Below are positions 519-41,230 of a DNA stretch of 64,000 bases, piece after piece. Numbering within the stretch: position 1 is the stretch's first letter; every line of letters starts with the position of its first letter. The notes below the pieces were generated by a model. The model did no database searches. It was not told where the DNA came from and saw only the letters and a program-made list of their open reading frames with translations. Origin of the DNA: Piromyces finnis finn. Lineage: Eukaryota; Fungi; Neocallimastigomycota. The position numbers and the translations under genes were made by a program. The stretch lies in assembly GCA_002104945.1 (NCBI GenBank), contig MCFH01000020.1, positions 682,001 through 746,000 of the forward strand. The letters run 5' to 3'.

Positions 519-2608
519 ATGCGTATTTCAGCTATTTTCAATTCATTACTTCTTGTTTCAGGATCTTACGCCTGGAAATGGGCCAAAAAGGGAAAGGCTT
601 CAGTTACCAGATATGGTAGTATGGGTATTTTATCTTGTAATTGTAAAATTTCAGCAATGGAAGTTGGTCCAGCTTGTGCTATCAATGAAAATGCCTATGG
701 TGGTTATGATGGTTTAGGTTCAGGAGTTGCTTGTGGTGTAAATATTATTATATAAAATTTTATTATTGACAATGAAATTAAAATGTTTATTATCAAAGTT
801 AAATACTAAAAAGTAATACACTACAGTATATATAAAAAGAATACATTAAAAAAATTGACAATGAAATTAAAATATTTATTATCAGAGTTAAATACTAAAA
901 AGTAATACATTACAGTATATATAAAAAGAATACATTAAAAAAAAAAGTTTTTATAATTAGAACGAAATAACAATAGTAATACAGTAATATGATTATTATA
1001 CAATATAAATTGAAATTCCAATTGAAATAAAATATCCAAATATGCATTTAAGTTTATAAATAAAATTTAAAATAAATCAAATATGATAATTATTAATTGT
1101 AATTGTAAATGAAGCAAATGATAATTCAATATTAAAAAGTTAAAAGATTCAAAATAAGAAGCCAAAGTATAAAAAATCAAAATGAATGATTATTATATAA
1201 ATGTATGAAAAATCAAAATTAAGCCATTTTAACTGTTTTTAATACCTAAAACGTTTATTATAAAAAATAAATAAAATTAATTATACTTGTACAATTCATT
1301 TGAATAAAATAGATGTGTTACAAATTAACTCCATATGGTACTTCTGAAACTGACCAATGGCCAAAATCAGAAGCTGACCTTCCAGGACCAATGGTCTTCA
1401 AGGTTACTGGTAAATATTTAATTGGATAAAGTAGTAAATAATTGTAATTCAGTTATATTAATATTAATATAATCATTAAAAAAATATAAATTAAAATTTT
1501 TAGATATTTGTCCATACAATGCTAATCCAAAATGGTGTCCAAGTCAAGAATCTGCTCCAAAGAACAGTGTTGGTATGGAATATCACTTTGATGTAAGTAT
1601 TTTAATAAATAAATAAAACAATAATAAAAAATTTAAATTGGTATATATTTTCTAATTTTTTTTATATAAATAATGAATATTGATTTGATATATATGTAGA
1701 TTAATGTTGATTCTTGGCAACCAGAAACTCTTATCAAATGGTTCGGTAATGGTTCATTAGGTACAATGAATGTCGAATTCGAATTAGTTTCCTGTGAAGA
1801 ATGGCTCGGTTGGTCAAAGAAGGGAAAATTCGAAGGTCTTGGTGTAAGTAGTGTCAAGTGTTATAATTATTTTAATATTAAAAAATAGTTGAAAAATTAT
1901 TTAATTAAAAAAATGGCAACGCTTATATTATAACTATAACAGGATAATCCATGGTGGGGTTGTTGTCCAGCTAATCCAGTAAATATAATATTTATTAATA
2001 AATTTATCATTATATGTAATTTTAATTCATATTACACAAGATATTAATTTTAATTGCTATAATTTAATAATAATAATAATAATAATAGTCTGTCGAACAA
2101 GATACAATTTGTGGTTACCCAGCCGAAAATAAGCCACCAGCTCCACAAGAAACTGACAGAATCAAGCCAACTGATTTCCCATTTGTTGGTGCTAGTAGCA
2201 GTAATGATGTTCAAGTTACTACCTCAAGCTCTGTTAAGCCAACTTCTTCTTCATGCTGGTCTTTACCAGATTACCCATGTTGTTCTACTTGTGATGTTGT
2301 TTACACTGATGATCATAACTGGGGTGTTGAAAACGGTGAATGGTAAATAATAAAATATAAAATAATAAAATTGGTATAATTTTTATTATAAATCTAATTT
2401 GAAATTAAAAATATATGAAACTTTATTTTATAAAAATAGGTGTGGTATTGATGATGAAGCTTGTGGTACTAACTCTAGTGCTTCTGAATGTCCAGTCACT
2501 GCCATCGGTTATCCATGTTGTCAAAACACTTGTGAAGAAGTATACACTGATGAATACAGATGGGGTGTTGAAAATGATGATTGGTGTGGTCTTAAAGACT
2601 CTTGTTAA
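519..2608 (+). CDS. Secreted GH45 subfamily C / expansin-like (DPBB fold) endoglucanase with two C-terminal fungal dockerin (CBM10-type) domains; 7 exons, about 335 aa
   Basis: GT-AG exons 519-737, 1313-1409, 1504-1592, 1700-1843, 1943-1978, 2089-2342, 2440-2608 splice into one frame (1008 nt). Signal peptide MRISAIFNSLLLVSGSYA. Motifs GKASVTRY, ACAINENAYG..GLGSGVACGMCYKLT, FKVTDICPYNANPKWC...NSVGMEYHFDI and EFELVSCEEW resemble PcCel45A. Two YPCC...VYTD...WGVEN..WCG dockerins follow a Ser/Thr linker. Confidence 0.85.
765..942. repeat. Tandem duplication of an 89-bp unit inside intron 1 of the GH45-like gene
   Basis: attgacaatgaaattaaaat...aaagaatacattaaaaaaa starts at 765 and again at 854 with few mismatches. 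Confidence 0.9.
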
Positions 2609-4168: not shown

Positions 4169-7100
4169 TTAATTACTACTTTGATTAAGAGATAAAGATG
4201 ACGATGTAGCAGAACTTGAATTTAATGAACCAGAACTAGAAAAGAGTTTCCATTTTTTTGATTCATTAGCCATGTCAGTATAAACAGCACATTCTGCTAA
4301 TAAATAGGCTTCCTTCATAATAAGTTCTTTATTTATTGGAGTACGCATTAAAAGAATAGAACGGTCAATACCTTGATATTGATTAGAAGCTTGTACAATT
4401 TCTCTTGCCTTGAGAAGTGCCTTTTGTTGTAAATCTTCAAAAGTTTCGGCAATTTCTTGTATGATACCCTTTTCTAATGCTTCTTCCATAGACATACCAT
4501 ATGAACCTGGTTGTAAATACATATCGAAACTGTTACCACGTTGAACGTAGGATTCCATATTAGCGGAAAGCATCATACCCGGACAAACACCTCTTGGTAA
4601 ATTACCAAAATCAATAGTAGAAGTTTTTAGAGCGACTCTCCAATCACAATTTAATGAAAGAGCTAAACCACCACCAACAATACGGCCGTTTAACATTCCA
4701 ATAACAGGTATCTTTAATTCAAGAATGGAAGCATAGTCACGATAAATTTCATAAACTTCTAATGCCATACGTAAATGTGTTTTTCCTTCAATATTGGCAA
4801 CCCAAGATGGATCAGCACCTGTACAAAAGTGTCTTCTATATCCACGTAAAATTACACATTTAATGTCCTTTCTATTTTTAAGGGTGTCTACGTGAGCATG
4901 AAGTTGACGAGAAACATCTAAATTCATACCATTATAATTTTGTGGAGAACAGATTTCAAGAACAGCAATACCTTCTTCAAGATCATAAAGCTTAACTAAT
5001 TCCTTACTATTATCCCAAGAAAGTTGATATTCTTCCATAGCACAACGAACCATAGTACTTTCCATCGATGGACTAGTTTCTTCTTCAGATTCACGAAGAT
5101 TTATAATATTAATTTGATTTGTAATAAATTTATCAAAAAGTATCTTAACTAAATTGTTGCATTGATCCTTAGTACTACAAACGAAATCTACTAAATTACA
5201 TTTCTTTGCTTCTTCTACTCGAATTGGTTCACCAAAAAGCATCATACGTTTAGCTGTAGTCTTAGAGAGCTTCTTTAAAGCTGCAACAGAAACTAAAGCA
5301 GGAATACCACCACGTCTAACTTCTGGAAAACCAAAACTAGCATCATCATAGGCAATAACATAGTCAGCCATTAATGGGAAAAGCATACTACCACCCCTAC
5401 AATTACCTTGGCATATAACAACAATTGGTTGAATAGCTTCTTCTAAACGTTTAACAAATTCACCATAATTCTTAATGGATTGTTCAAAAGCATCACTAGA
5501 AAAACCACCACTATTTAAATCCCATCCAGTAGAGAAATTCTTTCCATTACTTTCAATAAGAAGAATTTTGTTTGGATCATATGCCTTCATTAACTTTGTT
5601 AACATATCACCAGTAAAACTATTATTAGCTTCAGGACGGTTAAATACAACATGAACTACACGATCAGTACTTTCAATTATAATATCTGGTTTAGGAATAA
5701 TAGAAGATGGATCAACTGCTTTAGCTTTAGCAGCACTACTTGATGTAGCCTCAGAATCATTAGAATGGTGTGAATTTTTAGTCATTGGTACATTGACAAT
5801 TGGAGTTGGTGTCTTGACAACTGGAGTTGGTGTCTTGACAACTGGAGTTGGTGCCTTGACAATTGGAGTTGGTGTCTTGACAACTGGAGTTGGTGCCTTG
5901 ACAATTGGAGTTGGTGTCTTGACAACTGGAGTTGGTGCCTTGACAATTGGAGTTGGTGTCTTGACAACTGGAGTTGGTGCCTTGACAATTGGAGTTGGTG
6001 TCTTGACAATTGGAGTTGGTGCCTTGACAACTGGAGCTGGTGTCTTGACAATTGGGGTTGGTGCTTTGACAACTGGAGCTGGTGTCTTGACAACTGGGGT
6101 TGGTATCTTGACAACTGGGGTTGGTGTCTTGATAACTGGGGCTGGTGTCTTGACAACTGGAGTTGATACAAGTTTTTCTTCTAAATATGATTTAGCTATT
6201 GGAGTCTTAGTTCCAGATGAATCAAAGCTTAATTGAGCATTATTAACATTAATAACCTTTGGAACCTTCAAGACTTGATCTAATTTTTTATTCAAAACAT
6301 AATCTCCAGAGTCTAAATCTTTTATCTTGGGAGAAACAGTTACATTTTTCTTTGATGGTACTGGTTTTGGAGAAGGTGTGACCTTTCTTTCAACAGTTTC
6401 GGTAAGGTTTACTGGTGAGAAACTGACTGATGAATCTGAACTTCTTAAAGTAACATCTGCATCACTAGAAAGTTCAATTTCTTCTAATATTTTATCCTTT
6501 TCAAGACAAACCTTTCTTTCTGGATGAATACCAATCATATAAGTGTAGGTCTTACGAAGATCACGGTGATCCCATACATGTTTTGGCATTGGATAATCGA
6601 TACTACGAATCTTATCCAAAGTTTCACCATCAATACCATCCATGAAATCAATATAATATTGTCTCCAATTAAAGTTGTTGAAACATTTTTTAGCATACAT
6701 ATTTGCTATATTTCTACTTAAGCTATTATTATTATTTAACTTACGAGAAAGGGTATAGAAGATATTATCCTGATGGAAATCGTTACTCATATAGATACCT
6801 AAAACTGGTGTGGAACCAATTTCTAAAACTTTATCGATCTTTGAACGAGCAATCTTGGTTGCTTGGCTAAAGTTGACTGGACTAATGATATTTGTCCACC
6901 AATATTCTTCATCAAATGGACCTTGATATTCTCTGCCATAGGTAGAGGATATGAATGGAATCTTTGGTGCTTTAACTCTATTACCAATACCTTGGATACT
7001 TTGAAGGAATTTGTCCTTAGCTGTAATAATGTAGGAAGTATGGAAAGCCTTCTTTACCTTTAACATAACAGAAAAGACATTGTTCTTCCTGGCTTCAGCC

Positions 7101-10100
7101 ATAATTTCATTAAGTTGTTCAAGATCACCACCAAGAGTAATATCTTTTGGACTATTAATTGAAGCAATAAAAACCTTATCTTTACCCTTTAAGTAAATTG
7201 ATTGAGCTTCTTCAGAGCTACAACCAATAGCTAACATACCACTCTTTGCACCAGCATCAACTACATTTTCGCTTATTTGTCCATAGTTATAAAGTAAAAG
7301 AATAGCATCCTCAATAGTTAAAATACCAGCAGCATAAGCAGCAGCAACTTCACCCATACTATGACCAAAGACAAGAGCTGGTTCAACACCATAACGTTTC
7401 CATAGTTCAACTAGAGCTAATTCTATTATTCCAATAGCTGGGAATGAATACTGTGGATCTAAAAGTTTTTCTTCATTTACAGGACCCTTACCAAATAAGC
7501 CAGTCTCCTTTAAAAGATCTTTTTTAGAAATTTGGGTATGGATAGAATTGCAGTAATCAATAATACTTGCGAAATATGGGTTCATATTGTAAAGTTGAAG
7601 ACCCATTTCTGGATATTGAGTACCTTGACCTGAGAAGGTGAAGGCTACCTTTGGTTTAACAGAAATCTTATTATTATACTTGATAACATTGATATGATTA
7701 CGACCCTTTAAAATAATATCAACATAGTCATAGAATTTTGCTGGATCATCTAAAATAAAGGAAATACGATAATGACTGTCTTCTCTACAAGTATTTGAAA
7801 TATAAAGTTGTGGAAGAAGAGTTTCCATTGGAACCTTACGCCATTCTTCTAATTGTTGCATAACTAATTTTTCATTGTAACCAGAAATCTTGGCAACAAT
7901 TGGTTTGCCTTGAGAAATATTAAGTTGAATATCTTGTGGATTCAAATGTTTAACTTCTTCTAATAAAGCATTTGTGTTGGCACCACCAAAACCAAATGAG
8001 TTTACTGCAGCATGTAAGATATGAGGGGTATTCCAATCTTCTAATTTTTCACAAACTTTAATACCTAATTTTTCGGCATCAATAGCTTGATTAAGACGAT
8101 GATAGGCGGCCGTTGGTACTAATTTACGTTTATAAAGCATCATTGAAGTCTTAATAATGCTTACAATACCACTAGAATTTTCACCATGACCTGTATTACC
8201 CTTTACAGAACTAACTAATACAGGTGGGTCATTTGGACCACGAATACCCTTACCTCTACCATAAGCATCACCTATAGCATGGGATTCAATTGGATCACCA
8301 ACCTTTGTACCAGTACCATGGGCTTCAACATAATCAATTTGAGTTGGATTAATACCAGATTTCTCACAAACATGAGTTAATAACTTATATTGTGCTTCAT
8401 AGGAAGGCATAGTAAGAGATGGGGAACGACCGTCTTCATTACTACCACAACCAACAATTGCACAATAAATCTTATCACCATCACGAACAGCTTTCTCATA
8501 AGGTTTAACTAATATCATACCAGCACCTTCTAACTTTGCATAACCATCAGCTTTTTCATCAAATGGTTTACATGAACCATCTTTAGAAACAACACGAAGT
8601 TGAGAATAAGCTACAAAACTACCTGGGCAACTCATAAAGTTTGAACCAGCAACAATAGCCATTTCACAATCATCAGTAATCATAGCATTTAAACCGATGT
8701 TTAAAGCAGAGAATGCTGATGAACATGCAGTATTACAACTTATAGATGGTCCTTGGAAATCAAAGACATAAGACAAACGATTGGCTAAAATGGAAAGCTC
8801 AAAACCAGTAGGACTGTGTGAATTAATATCATTAGCATGAGAAATTTGGGTAACTAAGTAATCAATACCTGATGATCCAATAAAAACACCAGTACGAGAA
8901 CCCTTTAAAGTTTCTGGTTTGATATTTGCATCTTCAAGAGTTTCAACGGTTAACTCTAAGAGCCAGCGTTGTTCTGGTGACATTTCCTTAGCTTCTGGCA
9001 TGGAGATGTAAAAATATTTGTTATCGAAAAGATATGGATTCTCTAAGAAGGCACCACGTTTGGTTTGAATGGTTCCTTGAACAGGTTCTTTAGAATACCA
9101 TTCATCTTTATCCCATCTTTCCTTTGGAATATCTTTGGTAATGCATTTACCATCTTCCAACATTTTCCAGAAGGATTCCTTTGATTCAATACCTTCTGGG
9201 AAATGACAACCAATACCAATGACAGCAAATTTTGGTTGTTGATAACCAAAGTTTCTTTGATATTTCTTTTCATTGGTAGTGTTAGATAAATTAGAATTTT
9301 GTATTGGATTCTTCAATGGAGAATAATGTACCTTTGGTTGGTTTATTAATACTTCTGGGAATTGATAGATGGCTACACGACCGATAATTTTTAATGCACT
9401 ATCTATTTCATCTTTGGTTTTATTTGCTTGAACAGTGGTTAATATTTTATATTTATGTATAGCATCTCTTTCGCTAGATTCATATGATACATATAAACCT
9501 TGTTCCTGTAATGCTTTATGAAAAGCGATTCCTGCATCATCAGTTGGCATGAAAATTGGAATGGTTGCTGATTTTGAATGACTTGGAACGTCTAAACCTA
9601 TACCTTTTAAACCATTCTTCCATTGAAGAATATTTTTAAAAAGTTGATGGCGTCTAGTGATTCTACCAGAAGATAAATTCATTGGTTCTTCTAAACTACT
9701 ATAGCTAGCTAATAAAGCATTGGCAGTATTTGGTAAGATAACTTCTTTTTCATTTCTTTTAATAATACGATCCATAAATTCCTTTTGATTTTCACCATAT
9801 GCAATAAATCCACCATTTGATTCCATGATTCCTGAAAATGAACCTGTTATAAAATCAACTTGACCTTTTAATTTATAAAATTCAAGTATATTATTTGATG
9901 AACCATCAAAGAAACCACAACCAAATGTATCATCTATTACAACTATACATTGATAAGTTTGAGCTATTCTATTTATTTCTTTTAATTGACATATATCACC
10001 TTCGTTTACAAAAATACTTGATGAAGCAATGACTTTTTTACTTTTTGGGAATTTTTCATGAACTAATTTAACTTGTTTTTCTAAATTCTCTATAGCATTA

Positions 10101-10842
10101 GCGTGTGAATATGATAATGTTTTTGCTTTTGAAAATAAAACAGCATCTATTACATTTTTTGAACTTGAAGAATCATAAAATATATAATCCATTCTTGTTA
10201 CTAATGTGGTAAACAATGATATATTTGCAACATTGGCTATTGAATTAAAAACAATAAATTAAATTATTTCGTTGATTTTATGATAATGCCAATTATAATC
10301 ATGATAGTTTTTAAATATTATTTTATTATGTAAATATATATGATAGTTTTTAAATATTATTTTATTATAGTAAAACATAAGAAATATTAAAAATAAAGGA
10401 TAATCATGATAAATAAAGATATTATATATATATGTGTGTGTTGTGTGCGTGTGTGTATGTTATACAAATATAATAATATAAAAATACAATATAGTATTGT
10501 ATTTAATTATTGTTAATAAATAAAGGACTTTTTATTATTGGTATAAAAAATTTTATATTATATTACCGCCAGAAAATGTAGCAGCATATTGATATCCATA
10601 ATCTTTTGATAATTTTTGCTCCAATTGTATTTTTAATGGACATTGTATATCTGAATTTAAACCATATTTTTCAATAGCTTCTATAGCTGCTTTTTTAACT
10701 TTGTCAATTTTTCCAAATTCAAATGGTAAAGAAGAGCAAAAATTTAAAGTCTTCATATAATAAAAATTTTATTATTTGGTTATATATCTTTATATAAAAT
10801 ACTAATATATGATTGTTTATTAATACTTACTTTATTTGACAT
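4169..10842 (-). CDS. Type I PKS-like multidomain protein: degenerate PLP alpha-oxoamine synthase (AONS/SPT-like) - KS - AT - Pro/Thr repeat - crotonase - crotonase; about 2087 aa
   Basis: Exons 10842-10831 (MSNK; start less certain), 10750-10567 and 10236-4169, all GT-AG and in frame. AOS-like motifs: LNFCS, KAAIEAIEKYG, FSGANVAN, EGDICQL, DDTFG. KS at about 9230-7955 with NTACSS, EAHGTGT, GNTGHGE and NSFGFGG. AT at about 7650-6740 with FSGQG, GHSMG and AFH. Two crotonase folds: FNRPEANNSF...FSTGWDL...FGFPEV at about 5660-5180, and HFCTGAD...GGGLALSLNCDWR at about 4980-4280. Confidence 0.88.
5796..6164 (-). repeat. Coding minisatellite, 21-bp unit, 17 full copies plus a partial one, encoding K(T/A)P(T/A)P(V/I)V
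   Basis: acaa(c/t)tggagttggtg(t/c)cttg units on the plus strand, in frame within the PKS-like ORF. Confidence 0.97.
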
Positions 10843-16262: not shown

Positions 16263-16925
16263 TTATTGAATTTGAATAAAACGAGTTTGATTTTTTTGAG
16301 TTTTAATTTTATTAATAATTATTTCTAGAACACCATTTTCCATTTTTGCTTGAATATTATCGATATTACCATCTTCTGGAATAGTAAATGATCTAGAAAA
16401 ACTACCATAGCAACATTCCATCATACTATATTTGTGATTATTATTACGATCATTAATTTCAGCTTCCATTCCATCATTTGTTGTTGTTGTTGTTGAAGCT
16501 TGTTCTTTTTCATTTTCTTGTCTTTCTTTTTTAGATTTTTCATCAGCATTATTTTTATAGATATTTTCTCTTTCTCCTGAAATTGTTAAAGTTCTTTCTT
16601 CATCAATTTCCATCTTAATTTTATCCTTAGTCATCCCTGGTAAATCGGCATGAATATAATAATTATTTTCATCTTCACTAAGATTCATTTTAGGTTCAAA
16701 ATCAGTTAAAAATTTAGTGTCATCATTAAATATTTTATTCAATTGTTTTTCTAAAGTATCATAGCCAAATGAATTTCTATATCTACGATGTCCACTACGA
16801 GTATAAAATGGTGTATTATAAGAAGAAACAGGAATCAAAGAGTCAAAGAAAGCATCATTATCGAAAGCATCGAATAATGAATTTTCAAATGAATGAATTG
16901 GTTGAGAATAAATATATAAAGACAT
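16263..16925 (-). CDS. hsp20: Small heat-shock protein (Hsp20 / alpha-crystallin domain), 220 aa
   Basis: FEPKMNLSEDENNYYIHADLPGMTKDKIKMEIDEERTLTISGER...YGSFSRSFTIPE...IQAKMENGVLEI; single exon. Confidence 0.95.
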   Translation of the reverse strand: MSLYIYSQPIHSFENSLFDAFDNDAFFDSLIPVSSYNTPFYTRSGHRRYRNSFGYDTLEKQLNKIFNDDTKFLTDFEPKMNLSEDENNYYIHADLPGMTKDKIKMEIDEERTLTISGERENIYKNNADEKSKKERQENEKEQASTTTTTNDGMEAEINDRNNNHKYSMMECCYGSFSRSFTIPEDGNIDNIQAKMENGVLEIIINKIKTQKNQTRFIQIQ

Positions 16926-28665: not shown

Positions 28666-30816
28666 ATGTATAATGGAAATATTACACATTCATTAGATAG
28701 AAATCATTCTCTATCACTTTTTTATTCAAGGAGAACACCTAGTAAAGCAAAGCCTATTAAAAAACAATCAAAATTTTTACTTCCTACTGGTGAAAATTTA
28801 TCACCAATAAAAGATAATGTTATTACACCATATAATTCAACGACAACACCAATACTAGTTCATTCATTAAGTGATATGTCATTAAAAAATGATACCAATC
28901 ATTTAGAACCAGATGATTCACCAACACCAGCAAGTCGTTATTCTATAATTAAACCAAATGTTGGAAAACAAAATATAAATAATAATAATCTTCAAGAAAA
29001 ATCCTTGCCTTTATATCCAAATAGTATTTCCCAAAAATTAAATAATAAATCAAATATAAACAATAAAGATGAAGATTTCCAAAATATGTTAACTCTACCA
29101 AAATTTCAAAGAAGAACAGCACGTATGGCAGTAGTAGTATCAGAGAGAAAACCAGTAAATCTATTTACTAACCAGTTAAAAGAGGAAAAAAATAAAATAA
29201 ATAATACATTAGAATTAAAAAATGAAATTTCTAATAATGAAAAGAGTAAAATGAATTTAGATGAACAAAATACAAATTTAGATAATTGTCCTCATTCAGA
29301 AGGTTTTTTAAATAGTGATGGTATATGGGAAGATCCCACACTTTCTCAAAGTGAATCAAGGTGCCTTCAAACAACTATGGTAGACAATATTATGAAAACA
29401 AATGAAAATTATGAATCAGTAATAGACAAAAATAATAATGATAAAATGTTGATGTGGGATTTTGAAGAAGACAATAAATTCAATGATAAGGAAAATATTA
29501 TACCCGACGATTATAAAGGTGGAATATTAGCAGAACGTGAATGGTGTGACCTTGGAAATGATGATGATTCCATAATGGAAGAGTACGATGATCTTTCAAA
29601 ATCAACATTACAAAAAGGTAAAAAACAAAGTAATGGTATGATTAAAAAAAGTGAAAATCAGCATGTGAGATATGCATTTCAAGAGATATCTATTAATTCC
29701 ATGCCAGAATATCAAATGAACTCTACAGATTGTTATAGTGTATACTCTAACAGTAGTTTTGGAAGTGCCTGTGATTCTCAATTCATGAATACTCCAAAGA
29801 AATATTTTGGTAGTTATAAAATGAACAATTCCTTCTCAAATAGTTTAACCAATAATAGTAATATAGATAATAATGATTCTACTCCATCATTCTTCAATAC
29901 ATTACCTCTCAAAACAATGAAAGTTAACGCTTCATCATCTTCTACAAACCCAAAAAAAATAATGAATACAAAAAAAATAGTGTATCAACTTTGTGGAGTA
30001 CCTGACATAAATGCGGTTCATAAGCGCTCTATAGCAAAATCAAAAGGAAACATTAAAATAGAAAAAAAAGGTTTAGAAATTGATAATCCATCCTTTATGA
30101 ATTCTTCACCAATAATATCAAAATCTTCTATACTATCACCATCACTTTTACTATCTTCACCTTTCGTAAGAAATGGTTTTTCATCGCCATTGGTTCAAAC
30201 GAATACTAATTATTATATTAACCCCCCAAGAAGAAAAAAAATACATTTAGGAGATAATCAGAATAATGAACTAATTACCGAAAAAGATACCATAAGTACT
30301 TTAGTGCATCAAGATATTGAAGATGATACAACCCCAAAACCACCTAAAGTTAAATCCTTATTATCTTCTTCATTTGATAATAATAATTTATCTTCTTCAG
30401 AATGTAAGTCAGTACCTGTAGCTGAAAAAATAGCATCAAAGGAAAATTTAAAAATTTTAGAGTCCTCACAAACAAATGAAAAAGAAGAAGAAACTGTATT
30501 TTTCCCTCACTATCATTCAAAATATCATAACCAAGCAAATGATAAGAAGTTAGATATTGAAGAAAAGATAATTGCAGATGAGACTTTTCTTTCTCAAACC
30601 AGTAGTATGATGAGTATTAGTCCTTCAACACTTTCAAAAATTAATGAAACTCATCAAAGTTTCCTTCAATTGAACCAAAATCTTGATATTGTAGCAGAGG
30701 AAGCTTCAGCCAATACTTCTATCAATCTACCCAGAAGAAATAGAATATCCGTTGAAGACAAAAAGAAAGAATTATTAAGTAGAAGAAAATCAAGAATAAA
30801 GAAATACGTTTTTTAA
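28666..30816 (+). CDS. Hypothetical low-complexity (N/S/K/E-rich), probably disordered protein, 716 aa
   Basis: Uninterrupted 2.15-kb ORF with coding-like GC in AT-only surroundings; basic C-terminus KKKELLSRRKSRIKK; no recognised domain. Confidence 0.8.
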   Translation: MYNGNITHSLDRNHSLSLFYSRRTPSKAKPIKKQSKFLLPTGENLSPIKDNVITPYNSTTTPILVHSLSDMSLKNDTNHLEPDDSPTPASRYSIIKPNVGKQNINNNNLQEKSLPLYPNSISQKLNNKSNINNKDEDFQNMLTLPKFQRRTARMAVVVSERKPVNLFTNQLKEEKNKINNTLELKNEISNNEKSKMNLDEQNTNLDNCPHSEGFLNSDGIWEDPTLSQSESRCLQTTMVDNIMKTNENYESVIDKNNNDKMLMWDFEEDNKFNDKENIIPDDYKGGILAEREWCDLGNDDDSIMEEYDDLSKSTLQKGKKQSNGMIKKSENQHVRYAFQEISINSMPEYQMNSTDCYSVYSNSSFGSACDSQFMNTPKKYFGSYKMNNSFSNSLTNNSNIDNNDSTPSFFNTLPLKTMKVNASSSSTNPKKIMNTKKIVYQLCGVPDINAVHKRSIAKSKGNIKIEKKGLEIDNPSFMNSSPIISKSSILSPSLLLSSPFVRNGFSSPLVQTNTNYYINPPRRKKIHLGDNQNNELITEKDTISTLVHQDIEDDTTPKPPKVKSLLSSSFDNNNLSSSECKSVPVAEKIASKENLKILESSQTNEKEEETVFFPHYHSKYHNQANDKKLDIEEKIIADETFLSQTSSMMSISPSTLSKINETHQSFLQLNQNLDIVAEEASANTSINLPRRNRISVEDKKKELLSRRKSRIKKYVF

Positions 30817-34516: not shown

Positions 34517-35908
34517 ATGAAATTTAGTACTGTTTTAGCTTCTTCTATTTTAGCTGCAGGAGCTTTAGCCTCCTCTTGTCACCCAAGTTACCCATGTTGT
34601 AACGGTTGTGATGTTACCTACGTTGATAACGAAGGTGAATGGGGTGTTCAAAACAACAACTGGTGTTTCATCGACAGTGGTAAGTGTCATCCATCTAGTT
34701 GTAAATTCGAAGCTCTTGGTTACAGTTGCTGTTCCAACTGTGGACCAGTTTACTTCACTGATTCTGATGGTAAGTGGGGTGTTGAAAACGGTAACTGGTG
34801 TGGTATTCCAGATAACTGTGGTAACAGTGGTTCTAGAACCACTACTAGAACTACCACTAGAACCACCACCACTAGAACCACTACTACCAGAAAGACTTAC
34901 CCAACTGTTACTCCATCTTTCTTCAGTAGTGGTAACATTTACAGTAATGGTCAATACCAAAATGAAGTCCAATCATCTGTCAATAAATTAAGTGGTAATT
35001 TACAACAACAAGCTTCTAGAGTTAAGTACACTCCAACTGCTGTTTGGTTAGCTTGGTACGGTGCTCCAGGAGAAGTTAGTGGTCACCTTGGTGCTGCTGG
35101 TGGTAACACTGCAGTCTTCATGATGTACTGGATTCCAACTCGTGATTGTAACAGTAACGCTTCTCAAGGTGGTGCTAGTGACTTAAACGCTTACAAGAAC
35201 TACGTTGACAGTGTTTACAATTCCTTCAGATCTCACTCCAACAGCAAGATTGTTGTTGTTGTTGAACCAGATACTCTTGGTAACATGGTTACTTCTCAAG
35301 GTAACGAAAACTGCAGAAGAACTGCTGTTATTCACAAGGAAGCTCTTGCTTACTGTATTAACAAGTTCGGTAGTCTTAACAATGTCCAAGTTTACCTCGA
35401 TGCTGGTCACAGTGCTTGGTTAACTGGTTACGAAGATGAAACTGCCGAAATCATTAAGGAAATCTTAGATATGGCTCCACAAGGTAAGATTCGTGGTTTC
35501 TCTACCAACGTTTCTAACTTCCAACCAATTGAAAAGGAATATGCTTACCATACTAGACTTTACGATGCTCTTGAAAAGGTCGGTGTTAAGAACATGAGAT
35601 TCATTATGGATACTTCTCGTAATGGTGTTGATATTAGTGAAGCTTTTGCTAAGACTAAGACTTGGTGTAACCTTGTTGGTACTGGTTTTGGTGAACGTCC
35701 AAAGGGTAACCCAGATACCGTTAACATGCCATTATTAGATGCTTACATGTGGTTAAAGCCACCAGCAGAATCTGATGGTTCTTCTCAAGGTTCTCGTGCT
35801 GATCCAGTTTGTGCTCGTTCCGACTCTCTTCCAGGTGCTCCAGAAGCTGGTTCCTGGTTCCACGATTACTTTGTTCAATTATTAAAGAACGCTAACCCAC
35901 AATTTTAA
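34517..35908 (+). CDS. celA: Cellulosomal GH6 cellulase (CelA-like): signal peptide, two N-terminal dockerins, Thr/Arg linker, GH6 domain; 463 aa, intronless
   Basis: Two YPCC/YSCC...WGV.N.NWC dockerins; RTTTRTTT linker; GH6 motifs IPTRDC, VEPDTLGNMVT, YLDAGH, GFSTNVSN, DTSRNG, WCN, DAYMWLKPPAESDG and APEAGSWFHDYFVQLLKNANP. Confidence 0.95.
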   Translation: MKFSTVLASSILAAGALASSCHPSYPCCNGCDVTYVDNEGEWGVQNNNWCFIDSGKCHPSSCKFEALGYSCCSNCGPVYFTDSDGKWGVENGNWCGIPDNCGNSGSRTTTRTTTRTTTTRTTTTRKTYPTVTPSFFSSGNIYSNGQYQNEVQSSVNKLSGNLQQQASRVKYTPTAVWLAWYGAPGEVSGHLGAAGGNTAVFMMYWIPTRDCNSNASQGGASDLNAYKNYVDSVYNSFRSHSNSKIVVVVEPDTLGNMVTSQGNENCRRTAVIHKEALAYCINKFGSLNNVQVYLDAGHSAWLTGYEDETAEIIKEILDMAPQGKIRGFSTNVSNFQPIEKEYAYHTRLYDALEKVGVKNMRFIMDTSRNGVDISEAFAKTKTWCNLVGTGFGERPKGNPDTVNMPLLDAYMWLKPPAESDGSSQGSRADPVCARSDSLPGAPEAGSWFHDYFVQLLKNANPQF

Positions 35909-37207: not shown

Positions 37208-40200
37208 ATGTCAGTCCTTTATATTAAAGATAAGAATTATATCAGACGTGGTACCCGGTCTTATGGTATCCCCTTAGATGATATTCGCTCCTTCTTTATC
37301 CGTGGTATTCGATCATGGTCAGTAAATATGCTATGGGAAAAACTCGAGGTTATTCTAGAAGATAAATTTAATTCAGTTATTAGTGTTAAATATTTTCAGA
37401 CTTTCAATGATCACTTTTTCTTAGTCAAGGTTCATGGTTCATCAAAAGATTGTATTAAAATCTTACACATGTTAAAGAAGAAACTTTCAGTTACCTCAAT
37501 TTCCTTTTCAGCTCGTAGTAGAAGGAATCACAAATACACTTTTTCCACACTCAAACGTAAAATTTTAGTTTCTAATAAACATCAACATTCTATTCAACAA
37601 TCATTTCAACAATCAGTTCAACAATCTCATCAACAATCCGATCTTCAACAAGATCTTCAACAAGATCTTCAACAAGTTTCCCATCATGAAAATATTCCAG
37701 ATCTACAGCAAACACAATTTCAATCTCAACATTCAACAATTAATTCTAATAGTTCTATCAACTCTGATAACAGTTCAATAGTTGATAGTTCTTCAGTTTC
37801 ACAGCCATCTAGTAATAGTTCTACTTATTCCTCTGATGCATCATCCATTAATAATGATGACTTTAATAATAATAATAATAGCAACGATTCTTCCTCATCC
37901 TCATCCAACAAGCCTGATAACTTTTCTTTTTGTCTTAGTTGGAACACCAATGGGTGGAATCACGAAAAGAGAGATAGTATTAGCTATTTCACAGCTATTT
38001 TCAAACCATTATTTTTATGTTTCCAAGAAACTGGTAATGGTTCTGGATCGAATACAGATTATCCTTGTCGTGTTACTTTGCGAAACTATAGACACTTTTT
38101 CAAGAAAGCTGACGAATCAGTTCCTGGAATGAGAGGTTTATATTTAGGTTTTCACAATTCGTGTCAAGCCTCACTTGAAAACTTCTCTGGAAAGTATATT
38201 ATTTCTATTTATACTTTTAGTCTTTGGAATAGATTCAAATGCTCGATTGGAAATGTTTATATGTCTCATAGTCATCACAACATCTATGTTGATCATGCAA
38301 AGTTAGAAGTTCGCTTGTGGTTACAAACTCATTCATCCCATCCATCGATTCTTGTTGGTGATTTTAATATGTCTAAAGTTAAATTATTCAACTGGTTATC
38401 AACTAATGGATTAGGAGATTGGGAAATTCTTCCGCTTAGAGGGTCGACTATCTCTTGGACTCGAGGTGATCAATCTTCCGACATTGACCATGTTCTTATC
38501 AATTTGAAGATGAAAGATCTTATTCACTCAGGATCATTTATAAATAATTTTTATCCTGTATCAGACCATAAGCCACTTCTTATTAATGGTAAAATTATTC
38601 CTATGGAAGATTTTTCTAATGACTTTAATGTTCCTAAGAAAATTCTGAAATGGAATAGATTAAAATGTATTGAGGAAAAGGAATCTATTCTCAGTCATAA
38701 TAAATTCCAAATACTTTCAGCCAAATTCAACGATCCTAATGTTTCTACAGATGAACTTTCCAAAGAGTTTACTTCAACTGCTTTTTCAATTGCAGACGAG
38801 CTCAGTATTACTTCAGCAAATAATGTTATAAAGTCTTCATTTCATATTTCACAACAAATTTTTAATCTTCAAAAAATCAAAATGAAGTTGTATAAGAGAT
38901 TTAAAAAAGAAAGAATTTATGATATAGATGAATTTATTAAAAGAATTAAAATCTACCGTAAGCTCATTGATTACATCCACAAAAGATGTAATGAATTTAG
39001 GAAGCAAGAATATCTTCATTGGATTAAATCAGGATGTGAGTATATGAAGAGTCATAATCCTAAGAAGGCCTGGAAATGGATCAAGAAAACTGCAAAAATT
39101 GGAAAAGATTCTTTCTTTATTGCTCAACCAATTAAAAATAAAAATGGAGAATTAGTTGTTGCTACGGAAGAACAACTTGAAGTGTGGCATGATCATTTCG
39201 AAAACCTTGCATCAGATCCAAGTGGTGTAAGTCTTGATTTGGAGCATTGGTATGAAGAACCAACGAATAAACGTTTTTCACTTCCTATGCTTGATGAGTG
39301 GGATATCAACCAAGATATTAGTATTGATGAAGTCAAGTCAGCTATCCTCTCTACTCCAAATTATAAAGCATCAGGTCCGGATGGTATTCCAATTGAATTT
39401 TACAAAGCATTAATTCCATCAAGTAATGATTCTAATAATGCTACAGGTAATAATTCTTCCGGTAATACCACTTCAGATAATGATGCTCATGGTTTAAATT
39501 TTATTCTTAAATTATTCAACCGTATTTGGGATGGAGACTTCCCCAACTCATGGAATGAATCCAGTATTGTTTCTATTCCTAAGAAGGGAGATTTGACAGA
39601 TTGTGATAACTATCGAGGTATATCACTTATCAATAATGGTATTAAGTTGATTTCCAAAATTGTCACCACTAGAATCTCAGAATATGGTCTAAAGAATAAT
39701 TTCATTAGACCTGAACAATTTGGTTTTCGAAAAAAGGAAGAAAGTATCAGTCTTTTCATTTCAATCCAAGAAATATGCCGTAGACGTCAATTAGATAATA
39801 AAGAGACATATTTGGCCTTTTTAGATCTCAGGAAAGCATACGATTCAGTCCCAATCGGTAATATTCTCCATAAATTAGATTGTTTAGGAATCCGAGGTAA
39901 GAGTTTACAATTCATCAAAAATTTATATTTAACATCTAAGGCTAATGTCAAATTAGATGGACAATTCTCGAAATCTTTTGATGTGAAGAAAGGAGTCCGT
40001 CAAGGTTGCCCTCTTTCTCCTATTCTCTTTAATCTCTTTATTAATGATATTTTTAAAGAGTGCGAAGATCTTGGAGTCAGTTTAGGTGACACTCGATGCT
40101 GTGGTGGACTTTTTGCAGATGATATAGTTATTTGTGCTCCAACAAGAGGATGCTTAAAAAAGATGCTAAGAAGAGTTAATGAATGGGCCTTGTATAATGA

Positions 40201-41230
40201 AATGGAATTTGGTATCCAGAAATGTTCAACGATGGTGATTCGTCCTGAATCAATAGAAAATCAGATCAAGAGAGATCCAACATTTTACTTAGCAGGACAA
40301 CCCATTCCAACTACTGATTGTTATACTTATCTTGGTGTTCCATTTGATAAGAATCTGTCCCTTAAACCAGTAATTAAAGCTCTTAATAACAAGGTTTTGA
40401 AAGGACTTTTTTCAGTCAGTAAATTCTTAAGAAATCCTAATATTCCTATTCCCTTCAAAAAGCTAGTACTTAACTCACAAGTGATTAGCAGAGTTTCATA
40501 CTTTGCACCATTACTTGGATCCAACAAAGCTAGGTCTAGAATTGCTCAGAAGCATGTTAACAAAGGAATACGATGGGTTGCCGGAGTTCATAAAGTTATA
40601 TCGTTTATATCTTTATACTCTATCTCAAAAGATTTGAATATTCCTCCATTGTCAGCCAAATGTGCGTTAGCTCAGGTTAGATGTTTTAACAAATGGAAAA
40701 ACTCAAATTGTATTATCTCATACCTTGTCAATTACATTCCTAAATTTAGAAAATACACGTGGTGCAAATCAAGTAGGACACTTGATAAAAAACTAAAGAA
40801 GCATGGAGATGTTAAAGCAGTTAAAAACTTTTATTGGAAAGATCTCAAAAGGAATTCAATCAAAGCGCAATATTATGATGATAATAAATTTATTGAAACT
40901 AAAGATTTTATTAAATTATGTTATGAGTACCCAGAGTTTGCCTATGGCTTCTACTGGCTCTTGAAAGCAAGAAGCGGATACAAGTTGGATGCTAGAGTTG
41001 CCAAAGCTGCTAAATTTGTTGATCCAGTTTGTCCTAACTACTGTCCATGTTGTGAGAGTGGAGATCAAAGAATAATAATGAAAATGTTAATATCAGTAGA
41101 GATAGCAATAACATTAACAGTAATAGTAACAATAATAATAATAACAATAGTAGTAGTAGAAATAGTAATAATAATAATAGTAATAATATTAGTAATATTA
41201 GCATTAGTGAAGATAATAATTCTAATTTAG
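37208..41230 (+). CDS. LINE ORF: N-terminal extension, APE endonuclease, reverse transcriptase; frameshifted or deleted near the C-terminal zinc knuckle
   Basis: APE motifs SWNTNG, FQETG, GDFN, DIDHVL and SDHKP. RT motifs KASGPDGIP, PKKGD...NYRGISL, QFGFR, FLDLRKAYDSV, GVRQGCPLSPILF, LFADD and YTYLGV. CPNYCPCC is followed by out-of-frame low-complexity sequence. Confidence 0.95.
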   Translation: MSVLYIKDKNYIRRGTRSYGIPLDDIRSFFIRGIRSWSVNMLWEKLEVILEDKFNSVISVKYFQTFNDHFFLVKVHGSSKDCIKILHMLKKKLSVTSISFSARSRRNHKYTFSTLKRKILVSNKHQHSIQQSFQQSVQQSHQQSDLQQDLQQDLQQVSHHENIPDLQQTQFQSQHSTINSNSSINSDNSSIVDSSSVSQPSSNSSTYSSDASSINNDDFNNNNNSNDSSSSSSNKPDNFSFCLSWNTNGWNHEKRDSISYFTAIFKPLFLCFQETGNGSGSNTDYPCRVTLRNYRHFFKKADESVPGMRGLYLGFHNSCQASLENFSGKYIISIYTFSLWNRFKCSIGNVYMSHSHHNIYVDHAKLEVRLWLQTHSSHPSILVGDFNMSKVKLFNWLSTNGLGDWEILPLRGSTISWTRGDQSSDIDHVLINLKMKDLIHSGSFINNFYPVSDHKPLLINGKIIPMEDFSNDFNVPKKILKWNRLKCIEEKESILSHNKFQILSAKFNDPNVSTDELSKEFTSTAFSIADELSITSANNVIKSSFHISQQIFNLQKIKMKLYKRFKKERIYDIDEFIKRIKIYRKLIDYIHKRCNEFRKQEYLHWIKSGCEYMKSHNPKKAWKWIKKTAKIGKDSFFIAQPIKNKNGELVVATEEQLEVWHDHFENLASDPSGVSLDLEHWYEEPTNKRFSLPMLDEWDINQDISIDEVKSAILSTPNYKASGPDGIPIEFYKALIPSSNDSNNATGNNSSGNTTSDNDAHGLNFILKLFNRIWDGDFPNSWNESSIVSIPKKGDLTDCDNYRGISLINNGIKLISKIVTTRISEYGLKNNFIRPEQFGFRKKEESISLFISIQEICRRRQLDNKETYLAFLDLRKAYDSVPIGNILHKLDCLGIRGKSLQFIKNLYLTSKANVKLDGQFSKSFDVKKGVRQGCPLSPILFNLFINDIFKECEDLGVSLGDTRCCGGLFADDIVICAPTRGCLKKMLRRVNEWALYNEMEFGIQKCSTMVIRPESIENQIKRDPTFYLAGQPIPTTDCYTYLGVPFDKNLSLKPVIKALNNKVLKGLFSVSKFLRNPNIPIPFKKLVLNSQVISRVSYFAPLLGSNKARSRIAQKHVNKGIRWVAGVHKVISFISLYSISKDLNIPPLSAKCALAQVRCFNKWKNSNCIISYLVNYIPKFRKYTWCKSSRTLDKKLKKHGDVKAVKNFYWKDLKRNSIKAQYYDDNKFIETKDFIKLCYEYPEFAYGFYWLLKARSGYKLDARVAKAAKFVDPVCPNYCPCCESGDQRIIMKMLISVEIAITLTVIVTIIIITIVVVEIVIIIIVIILVILALVKIIILI

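What the first reader, a model, noticed from the sequence alone, without database searches (positions are those of the whole stretch)
4169..10842. ACP-less PKS-like megaenzyme with an unusual AOS*-KS-AT-ECH-ECH architecture
Seen: one ORF joins an N-terminal alpha-oxoamine-synthase-like domain, a KS with an intact Cys-His-His triad (NTACSS, EAHGTGT, GNTGHGE), an AT with GHSMG and a malonyl-type AFH motif, a long Pro/Thr rod and two crotonase domains. I see no ACP, KR, DH, ER or TE. Known: fungal iterative PKSs carry their own ACP, and AOS domains in PKS-like proteins (SxtA, RedL, PigH) sit after an ACP as offloading modules, not at the N-terminus. Inference: this is one subunit of a split assembly line that must recruit a carrier protein and partner in trans, possibly making an amino-lipid/sphingoid-like or branched acyl product. 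No ACP, PPTase or tailoring gene is recognisable nearby.
Basis: partly seen in the sequence, partly recalled or inferred. Interest (0 to 1): 0.85.

Follow-up and report, generated by a model that had tools for sequence, protein, structure and literature searches.

The report
Carrier-less polyketide synthase with branching domains
An anaerobic gut fungus carries a well-conserved giant enzyme gene derived from a chain-building (polyketide) synthase that has lost its own carrier arm and several other parts, so it must work with outside partners or on free CoA compounds; what it makes is unknown.

Summary
One minus-strand gene (three exons, 10842-4169, 2087 aa) encodes a dead oxoamine-synthase fold, KS, AT, a disordered Pro/Thr spacer and two crotonase domains. 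No ACP, KR, DH, ER or TE is detectable in it or in orthologs from Piromyces sp. E2, Neocallimastix and a third gut-fungal source.

- **Crotonase pair.** It is homologous as a unit (30-35% identity, E down to 1e-76) to ECH-ECH didomains that sit as ACP(n)-ECH-ECH-HMG-synthase in PKSs of Burkholderia, Dyella and metagenomes.
- **KS.** It forms a clade with the KS of those PKSs (support 100/96). The gene therefore looks like a cut-down relative of a KS-AT-DH-ER-KR-ACP-ECH-ECH-HMGS synthase, with a dead AOS fold at its N-terminus.
- **AT.** It is not a normal malonyl AT. The carboxylate-binding Arg is Tyr in all orthologs, against Arg in 121 other ATs.
- **ECH domains.** ECH-A keeps the PksH-type Asp/Glu pair. 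ECH-B lacks the canonical decarboxylase His.
- **Selection.** All domains are under purifying selection (dN/dS 0.05-0.22).

The amino-lipid idea is unsupported.

The scan had already noted both sub-features of this stretch, and related ACP-less PKS paralogs elsewhere in this genome.

The parts
4169..10842 (-). Whole gene: exon 1 10831-10842, intron 10751-10830, exon 2 10567-10750, intron 10237-10566, exon 3 4169-10236 (stop at 4169-4171). Product 2087 aa.
   Evidence: The N-terminus matches intron-free ortholog P0003 across both junctions.
9317..10842 (-). Degenerate alpha-oxoamine synthase (AOS*) fold. The PLP-Lys position is Gly129 (codon 9830-9832). The His that stacks on PLP is Ser, and the His of the DxxH motif is Phe.
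   Evidence: Pfam PF00155. NCBIfam serine palmitoyltransferase 1.5e-34, below cut-off. Alignment to SPT 3a2b. The Lys position is Gly or Asn in the orthologs. dN/dS 0.22.
7823..9226 (-). Ketosynthase with intact Cys498 (8723-8725), His633 (8318-8320) and His677 (8186-8188).
   Evidence: Pfam PF00109/PF02801/PF16197. Translation. dN/dS 0.08. Clade with the KS of ECH-ECH-HMGS PKSs, support 100/96.
6647..7642 (-). Acyltransferase. Ser953 (7358-7360) and His1059 (7040-7042) are present, but the carboxylate-binding Arg is Tyr978 (7283-7285).
   Evidence: Pfam PF00698. Alignments to CurL and DEBS ATs. Tyr occurs only in this ortholog group, against Arg in 121 other ATs. dN/dS 0.11.
6482..6646 (-). 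Conserved post-AT linker that ends the KS-AT didomain.
   Evidence: Many invariant columns, residues 1197-1245. dN/dS 0.13.
5702..6481 (-). Non-conserved, probably disordered Ser/Pro/Thr/Val/Lys spacer. It includes a 21-bp tandem repeat x17.8 (5793-6165) that encodes TPxPVVK heptads.
   Evidence: dN/dS 0.34. The repeat block is absent from the Piromyces sp. E2 ortholog.
5072..5701 (-). ECH-A, a crotonase domain of ECH1 (PksH) type. Asp1566 (5519-5521) follows the oxyanion-hole residue. Glu1632 (5321-5323) lies 23 residues after Gly1609.
   Evidence: Pfam. Alignment A2. PksH catalytic residues Asp68/Glu137 from PMC7501309. dN/dS 0.08.
4247..5014 (-). ECH-B, the second crotonase domain. Both classical Glu residues are absent, with Arg1875 at the second Glu site. 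The position of the canonical ECH2 His is Tyr1979 (4280-4282), which varies among orthologs.
   Evidence: The most constrained domain, dN/dS 0.05.

Best explanation
This is a functional PKS derivative specific to gut fungi, with the order dead-AOS fold, KS, AT, flexible spacer, ECH-A, ECH-B.

Origin. It shares ancestry with a PKS type built as KS-AT-DH-ER-KR-ACP(n)-ECH-ECH-HMG-synthase, which carries a built-in beta-branching unit. The gut-fungal protein lacks the reducing loop, the ACPs and the HMG-synthase of that type, and it has an inactivated oxoamine-synthase fold at its N-terminus.

Most likely mechanism (inferred). It works as a trans-acting subunit on acyl chains held by an outside phosphopantetheine carrier, either a discrete ACP or the ACP of another synthase. 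The Arg-less AT would load a non-carboxylated acyl group. The intact KS would condense. ECH-A would dehydrate a 3-hydroxy-3-(carboxymethyl)acyl (HMG-type) intermediate made by an HMG-synthase encoded elsewhere. ECH-B would then process the glutaconyl-type product by decarboxylation or isomerisation, using a non-canonical active site.

The AOS* fold is non-catalytic. It probably serves in dimerisation, docking or ligand binding.

Shown: the domain content, the absence of an ACP, the residue states, the homology, the phylogeny and the selection. Inferred: the carrier, the substrates, the order of steps and the product.
For: - Domains and absence of ACP.
- Conservation in Piromyces sp. E2, Neocallimastix and a third source.
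- Purifying selection on every enzymatic domain (dN/dS 0.05-0.11) and on AOS* (0.22).
- Exhaustive search with the ECH-ECH didomain: the best hits outside gut fungi span both ECH domains in one stretch (E 1e-76 to 1e-50, 30-35% identity). They sit directly after ACPs and next to an HMGS in PKSs of Burkholderia ubonensis, Dyella jejuensis and metagenomes.
- The KS tree joins the gut-fungal KS with the KS of three such PKSs at 100/96 support.
- ECH-A keeps the PksH Asp/Glu pair at the same spacing.
- KS triad intact.
- AT Arg replaced by Tyr only in this group. The Arg's role in binding malonyl is described in PMC12199272.
- Ortholog contig L006 looks like a polyadenylated transcript: one ORF, short UTRs and a terminal A-run.
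Against: - No carrier, PPTase or HMGS partner was identified. None lies in the window, and the rest of the genome could not be searched.
- ECH-B lacks the His that PMC7501309 calls universal in beta-branching decarboxylases.
- Neither ECH domain reaches the NCBIfam cut-offs for the PksH or PksI families.
- An AT that cannot bind malonyl leaves the KS without an obvious extender supply.
- The tree used 62 KS sequences chosen from hits and is unrooted, so the direction of transfer is open.
- P0126 carries a carnitine-acyltransferase domain, and its source organism is unknown.
Confidence: 0.5

Rival explanations
1. Carrier-independent CoA chemistry. The ECH pair would act on free HMG-CoA from the mevalonate pathway, or on a related 3-hydroxy-3-alkylglutaryl-CoA. 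Dehydration and decarboxylation would give a branched enoyl-CoA of the 3-methylcrotonyl type. The Arg-less AT would take this non-carboxylated acyl group as a starter and pass it to the KS. All steps would run without a dedicated ACP.
For: - Crotonases natively use CoA esters.
- PksH and PksI turn over HMG-CoA in vitro, better than the SNAC analogue (PMC7501309).
- Piromyces has a working HMG-CoA synthase (PMC8468974).
- The AT lacks the malonyl-binding Arg.
- No ACP is present in any ortholog.
- The scan's notes report further ACP-less PKS paralogs in this genome (unverified).
Against: - To my knowledge (not checked here), type I KS domains normally need a phosphopantetheine-bound extender, and no CoA-only type I KS-AT has been described.
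- All homologous ECH-ECH didomains sit next to ACPs.
- ECH-B lacks the canonical decarboxylase His.
- The extender source is still unexplained.
Confidence: 0.25
2. A largely non-catalytic relic. The protein would be kept for a structural, regulatory or scaffolding role, for example as a partner of paralogous synthases. Some or all of its domains would be pseudo-enzymes, like the AOS fold.
For: - The AOS fold is dead yet constrained.
- The AT lacks Arg.
- ECH-B lacks both Glu residues and the ECH2 His.
- ACP and HMGS are missing.
Against: - The KS triad, the AT Ser-His pair and the ECH-A Asp/Glu pair are all intact.
- dN/dS of 0.05-0.11 in these domains is as low as expected for working enzymes.
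- KS identity is 84-93% across genera.
Confidence: 0.08
3. The enzyme would condense an acyl chain with an amino acid through its AOS domain to give a sphingoid-like product.
For: The complete AOS/SPT-like fold is retained. According to the scan's notes, paralogs elsewhere in the genome keep an active AOS (unverified).
Against: The PLP-binding Lys and two PLP-contacting His are replaced in all four orthologs. Without the Schiff-base Lys, the known AOS mechanism cannot run.
Confidence: 0.03
4. Incomplete gene model. An ACP or other domains would be encoded by exons that were missed.
For: The gene has two 5' introns. RNA evidence for this locus could not be obtained.
Against: - Start and stop match the intron-free, transcript-like ortholog L006/P0003 and the full-length Neocallimastix proteins.
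- Flanks of 5.4 kb upstream and 1.5 kb downstream have 10-18% GC and hold only low-complexity ORFs.
- tblastn with ACP and HMGS queries finds nothing.
Confidence: 0.03

Closest known systems
Uncharacterised single-gene PKSs of the type KS-AT-DH-ER-KR-ACP(1-3)-ECH-ECH-HMGS. Examples: Burkholderia ubonensis WP_080424809 (P0122), metagenomic P0126 and P0127, and the related Dyella jejuensis P0124/P0273.
   Same: The KS groups with the KS of P0122, P0126 and P0127 (support 100/96). The ECH-ECH didomain, including its inter-domain linker, aligns end to end at 30-35% identity. Shared motifs include CRGG.M.FP, FGFPE.R, HFC.G..P and GN.PRG..P.
   Different: The gut-fungal protein has no DH, ER, KR, ACP or HMGS. 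It has a dead AOS fold in front, a Tyr in place of the AT Arg that P0122 keeps, and a disordered spacer where the reducing loop and ACPs would be.
HMG-synthase (HCS) beta-branching cassettes of bacterial PKSs: PksF/G/H/I with AcpK in bacillaene, and CurD/E/F in curacin.
   Same: A tandem of a dehydratase-type and a second crotonase, in the order ECH1 then ECH2. ECH-A has the PksH Asp/Glu pair. The best NCBIfam family for ECH-B is the PksI-like NF005496. A KS and an AT accompany the pair, as in the cassette.
   Different: - There is no HMGS and no donor ACP.
- By recollection (not checked here), the cassette KS carries Ser at the active site, whereas this KS keeps its Cys.
- The AT cannot bind malonyl in the usual way.
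- ECH-B lacks the His230/His240 equivalent and scores 83 bits against a cut-off of 215. True ECH2 domains score 274-287 bits.
PKS or acyl-chain systems that end in an active alpha-oxoamine synthase. Bacterial PKS-AOS fusion clusters appear in the Atlas search. A PKS plus AOS makes sphingolipids in Pseudomonas (title of PMC12134224).
   Same: An AOS/SPT-like fold is fused to PKS domains.
   Different: Here the fold is N-terminal and has lost the PLP Lys and two His, so it cannot offload chains by the known mechanism.

Membership tests
Type I polyketide synthase module | KS with the Cys-His-His triad | tested here: met
   Cys498, His633 and His677 are present in the translation and invariant in the orthologs. 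Pfam KS 5.5e-70.
Type I polyketide synthase module | AT with the Ser-His dyad and the Arg that binds the extender carboxylate | tested here: not met
   Ser953 and His1059 are present. The Arg at Ser+25 is Tyr978 in all gut-fungal orthologs, against Arg in 121 other AT domains of the hit set.
Type I polyketide synthase module | Acyl carrier protein domain in cis with a DSL-type phosphopantetheine site | tested here: not met
   No PF00550 hit at E<=1 in this protein or in three full-length orthologs. No DS[LIVM] motif in 2087 aa. The linker is not conserved and is predicted to be coil.
HCS beta-branching cassette (ECH1/ECH2 with HMGS) | ECH1 dehydratase with the catalytic Asp next to the oxyanion hole and a Glu 23 residues after the second oxyanion Gly (PksH Asp68/Glu137) | tested here: met
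   Asp1566 in GWD and Glu1632 in FPE, with Gly1609 to Glu1632 spanning 23 residues. These are conserved across the didomain family. Reference residues come from PMC7501309.
HCS beta-branching cassette (ECH1/ECH2 with HMGS) | ECH2 decarboxylase with the conserved catalytic His (PksI His230, CurF His240) | tested here: not met
   In alignment A4 the His of the canonical ECH2 P0235 aligns with Tyr1979. That position is Tyr, Phe, Tyr and Ser in the orthologs and Arg, His or Gln in the related didomains. NF005496 scores 83 bits against a cut-off of 215.
HCS beta-branching cassette (ECH1/ECH2 with HMGS) | An associated HMG-synthase homolog and a carrier protein | tested here: not met
   Neither is in the protein nor in the 64-kb window by tblastn. 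The rest of the genome could not be searched with these tools.
ACP-ECH-ECH-HMGS didomain family (uncharacterised) | Collinear homology over both ECH domains and the linker between them | tested here: met
   Single alignment stretches cover query residues 5-479 of 516. Alignments A2 and A3. BLASTP against P0122 gives 33% identity over 520 residues, E 2e-75.
Alpha-oxoamine synthase (PLP fold type I; SPT/KBL/BioF) | Overall fold and sequence homology | tested here: met
   PF00155. PDB SPT 3a2b at E 8.7e-23. All NCBIfam SPT, KBL and BioF models score below their cut-offs.
Alpha-oxoamine synthase (PLP fold type I; SPT/KBL/BioF) | Schiff-base Lys and the PLP-contacting His residues | tested here: not met
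   Against 3a2b, the Lys is Gly129 (Asn in P0003), the His of the D..H motif is Ser, and the His of DDAH is Phe.

The most novel reading that the evidence does not exclude
A type I PKS-derived enzyme that has done away with the acyl carrier altogether. Its KS, AT and crotonase chemistry would run directly on CoA thioesters. For example, it could divert mevalonate-pathway HMG-CoA into a branched C5 enoyl starter and extend it. Together with the other ACP-less paralogs noted in this genome, this would define a carrier-free branch of polyketide-type biosynthesis in anaerobic gut fungi.
Probability: 0.2. Interest if true: 0.85.

Novelty: new variant of a known kind. Interest (0 to 1): 0.6.

Why it matters
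Gut-fungal secondary metabolism is almost unexplored. The one survey I read (PMC8106346) groups their PKSs into families. Its main text, and the supplementary files the tool holds as text, do not contain the terms ECH, crotonase or aminotransferase.

This gene is conserved across genera and strongly constrained. Yet it lacks the parts that normally make a PKS self-sufficient: a carrier, a malonyl-competent AT and an HMG-synthase for its branching domains.

Its function would show one of two things. Either these fungi run split, trans-acting assembly lines, or they run carrier-free CoA chemistry. It would also characterise a PKS type with a built-in beta-branching unit, KS-AT-DH-ER-KR-ACP-ECH-ECH-HMGS. 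I know of no description of that type, and I ran no literature search aimed at it.

The shared ancestry of the KS and the ECH pair adds a candidate case of PKS gene exchange between bacteria and gut fungi. The published KS trees did not support such exchange for gut-fungal PKSs in general.

Tried and rejected
- **AOS region searches.** Word-based homolog searches found only the three orthologs among long proteins and nothing among short ones. I could not test the scan note that the dead AOS descends from active sister enzymes.
- **Structure search.** Foldseek of the AlphaFold ECH-ECH model against the PDB returned only generic crotonases. It confirms the fold but does not separate ECH1/ECH2 types.
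- **PDB sequence searches.** Both ECH domains likewise hit generic hydratases first.
- **Linker model.** The AlphaFold model has low confidence throughout, so it is only weak support for disorder.
- **Protein Atlas.** The search gave leads below the reliable score.
- **P0143.** I first took this KS-AT-ER-KR-ECH-ECH-HMGS protein for the gut-fungal paralog named in the scan notes. Its contig has 40% GC and a neighbouring tRNA-synthetase gene, so it comes from another eukaryote.
- **Rejected readings.** An ACP hidden in the rod, missed exons, and an active AOS.
Full report
**Gene and observation**

The window is extremely AT-rich. Flanking DNA has 10-18% GC and coding DNA 30-38%. The finding lies on the minus strand. 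One 2015-codon ORF (4169-10216) is preceded by two short exons.

The spliced N-terminus aligns across both junctions with ortholog P0003, which is encoded without introns on a 6.3-kb contig. That contig has short AT-rich UTRs and a terminal A-run, so it is probably a transcript assembly.

No coding-like ORFs lie in the 5.4 kb upstream or the 1.5 kb downstream. Residue numbers below refer to the 2015-aa ORF.

**Domains**

Pfam finds Aminotran_1_2 (6-276), KS (331-705 plus the C-extension to 798), AT (859-1148) and two ECH domains (1518-1691 and 1751-1881+). There is no PP-binding, KR, DH, ER or TE even at E<=1.

Three full-length orthologs give the same seven families and nothing else. They include the Neocallimastix californiae-type protein P0279 and a Piromyces sp. 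E2-cluster protein.

Several lines argue against a hidden ACP:
- The whole 2087-aa protein has no DS[LIVM] motif.
- The stretch between the conserved post-AT linker and ECH-A (1246-1505) is not conserved among orthologs.
- In this species that stretch is dominated by a 21-bp repeat x17.8 encoding TPxPVVK.
- AlphaFold predicts no secondary structure for it, at low confidence.

**Residue states**

- **AOS fold.** It is dead. Against Sphingobacterium SPT (3a2b, E 8.7e-23), the Schiff-base Lys is Gly129 (Asn in P0003), and the two PLP-contacting His are Ser and Phe.
- **KS.** It keeps Cys498, His633 and His677.
- **AT.** It keeps Ser953 and His1059. The Arg at Ser+25, which pairs with the malonyl carboxylate (PMC12199272), is Tyr978. 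Alignments to the CurL and DEBS ATs show this. Among all AT motifs in the proteins fetched, 121 have Arg, and only the gut-fungal orthologs have Tyr.
- **ECH-A.** It has Asp1566 after the oxyanion-hole residue, and Glu1632 lies 23 residues after Gly1609. This is the pattern of the dehydratase PksH (Asp68, Gly114, Glu137; PMC7501309).
- **ECH-B.** It has neither classical Glu, with Arg1875 at the second Glu site. It also lacks the His that the same paper calls universal in beta-branching decarboxylases. The aligned residue is Tyr, Phe, Tyr and Ser in the four orthologs.

**Relatives**

Among long proteins, only three clusters share the full architecture. Their members carry names from Piromyces sp. 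E2 and several Neocallimastix species.

I ran an exhaustive HMMER search with the ECH-ECH didomain against 1.84 billion representatives. After the orthologs, the best hits match both ECH domains in one stretch (E 1e-76 to 1e-50, 30-35% identity).

These hits are PKSs in which the didomain directly follows ACPs and adjoins an HMG-synthase domain:
- Burkholderia ubonensis P0122 and the metagenomic P0127 are KS-AT-DH-ER-KR-ACP(n)-ECH-ECH-HMGS.
- Metagenomic P0126 has the same order plus a C-terminal carnitine acyltransferase domain.
- Dyella P0124 and P0125 end in ACP-ECH-ECH-HMGS.

In the Burkholderia and Dyella loci the PKS stands alone beside a reductase or a hydrolase gene, without a separate HCS cassette.

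A maximum-likelihood tree of 62 KS domains places the four gut-fungal KS sequences with the KS of P0122, P0126 and P0127 at 100/96 support. Two separate parts of the protein thus point to the same PKS type. The simplest reading is shared ancestry of the whole gene, with loss of DH-ER-KR-ACP and HMGS in the gut-fungal lineage.

The tree is unrooted and the sources of P0126 and P0127 are unknown, so the direction of transfer is open.

By the NCBIfam models the didomain family is not canonical. ECH-B scores 83 bits and P0122's ECH-B scores 87 bits on the PksI-like model (cut-off 215), whereas true ECH2 domains of P0235 score 274-287.

**Is it functional?**

I compared the window gene with the Piromyces sp. 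E2 ortholog (L001 9143-14986). dN/dS by region:

| Region | dN/dS |
|---|---|
| KS | 0.08 |
| AT | 0.11 |
| ECH-A | 0.08 |
| ECH-B | 0.05 |
| AOS* | 0.22 |
| Spacer | 0.34 |

The enzyme domains are as constrained as working enzymes. The dead AOS fold is also kept, which implies a non-catalytic role.

**Surroundings**

tblastn with HMGS and ACP domains of the relatives finds only noise in the 64 kb. The larger ORFs nearby are:
- a small HSP (16263-16925)
- an ORF with no Pfam family (28666-30816)
- a GH6-dockerin enzyme (34517-35908)
- a LINE-type element (37208-41230)
- an Argonaute (55754-61684)

According to a scan note, the gene at 519-2608 is a GH45-type dockerin enzyme. I did not scan it, but the Piromyces sp. 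E2 locus has a dockerin-bearing EXPB1_D1/CBM_10 gene in the same downstream position. PPTases were not searched.

**Mechanism**

What is shown is a conserved protein that lacks an ACP. It has an intact KS, an Arg-less AT, a PksH-type dehydratase and a second, atypical crotonase.

I judge a trans-acting role on an outside carrier most likely (about 0.5). Every relative of the didomain and of the KS works beside ACPs, and trans-acting KS, AT and ECH enzymes are standard in beta-branching. The HMG-synthase step would come from another gene.

The main rival (about 0.25) is chemistry on CoA esters. In its favour:
- PksH and PksI accept HMG-CoA.
- Piromyces makes HMG-CoA (PMC8468974).
- An AT without the Arg suits a non-carboxylated starter.

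**Earlier notes of the scan**

The same stretch had been noted for the lost PLP Lys (s1-173774) and for the ECH1/ECH2-like pair (s1-174011). I tested both. The first holds. The second holds for ECH-A and for the didomain's context, but not for the canonical ECH2 signature.

Notes on other DNA of this genome describe related PKSs: s1-078633, s1-185374, s1-185395, s1-185803 and s1-078652. They cover an active AOS, a full branching cassette, and further proteins without an ACP. I could not fetch those loci, and my searches did not recover them, so they remain leads.

The species name Piromyces finnis comes from those notes. The nearest named ortholog here is from Piromyces sp. E2 (84% identity over the aligned residues).

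**Novelty**

The survey of gut-fungal natural products (PMC8106346) does not contain the terms ECH, crotonase or aminotransferase in its text or in the supplements held. A search combining Neocallimastigomycota, ketosynthase and enoyl-CoA hydratase found no paper.

I rate the gene a new variant of a known kind, a type I PKS with beta-branching domains. Interest is moderate to high, limited by the lack of any functional or partner evidence.

Noticed in passing
window 5793-6165: A 21-bp tandem repeat x17.8 (88% matches) encodes the TPxPVVK heptads of the spacer. It also creates spurious long ORFs on both strands (5782-6171 minus, 5793-6236 plus). The repeat block is absent from the Piromyces sp. 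E2 ortholog, so it is a recent expansion.
   Followed up: partly
L003 10001-19867 (Burkholderia ubonensis) and L005 10001-18961 (Dyella jejuensis): These are single-gene bacterial PKSs with a complete in-cis beta-branching unit (ACP(n)-ECH-ECH-HMGS). A thioester-reductase-like or hydrolase gene lies next door, and there is no separate HCS cassette. I know of no characterised member.
   Followed up: partly
L002 2620-11277 (P0143, Logan ERR13954852): An intron-bearing gene in a 40%-GC eukaryote, not a gut fungus. Its order is KS-AT-ER-KR-ECH-ECH-HMGS, and Pfam finds no ACP at E<=1e-5. This is a second eukaryotic lineage with this PKS type. The region between KR and ECH was not examined further.
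   Followed up: partly
P0126 residues 3077-3621: One ECH-ECH-HMGS PKS ends in a carnitine O-acyltransferase domain. By recollection (not checked here), this release domain is otherwise known from fungal highly reducing PKSs. The source organism of this high-GC protein is unknown.
   Followed up: no
P0123, P0129, P0133 (ENA metagenomes): These proteins start with the ECH-ECH didomain. About 1100 residues further on they carry a third ECH and an ACP, followed in P0129 by an FSH1 serine hydrolase and in P0123 by an AT and an FSH1. No KS is detected.
   Followed up: no
window 37208-41230: An intact 1340-aa ORF with endonuclease/exonuclease/phosphatase and reverse-transcriptase domains (LINE-type retroelement).
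   Followed up: no
window 55754-61684: A 1976-aa Argonaute ORF with the full N/L1/PAZ/L2/Mid/Piwi set. It is preceded by about 1000 residues with no Pfam match.
   Followed up: no
window 28666-30816: A 716-aa ORF with no Pfam family at E<=0.001.
   Followed up: no
window 519-2608 and L001 17439-19558: The dockerin-bearing gene downstream of the PKS seems to be syntenic between this genome and Piromyces sp. E2. The E2 gene carries EXPB1_D1 and CBM_10. A scan note calls the window gene GH45-type. It is not a biosynthetic partner.
   Followed up: partly
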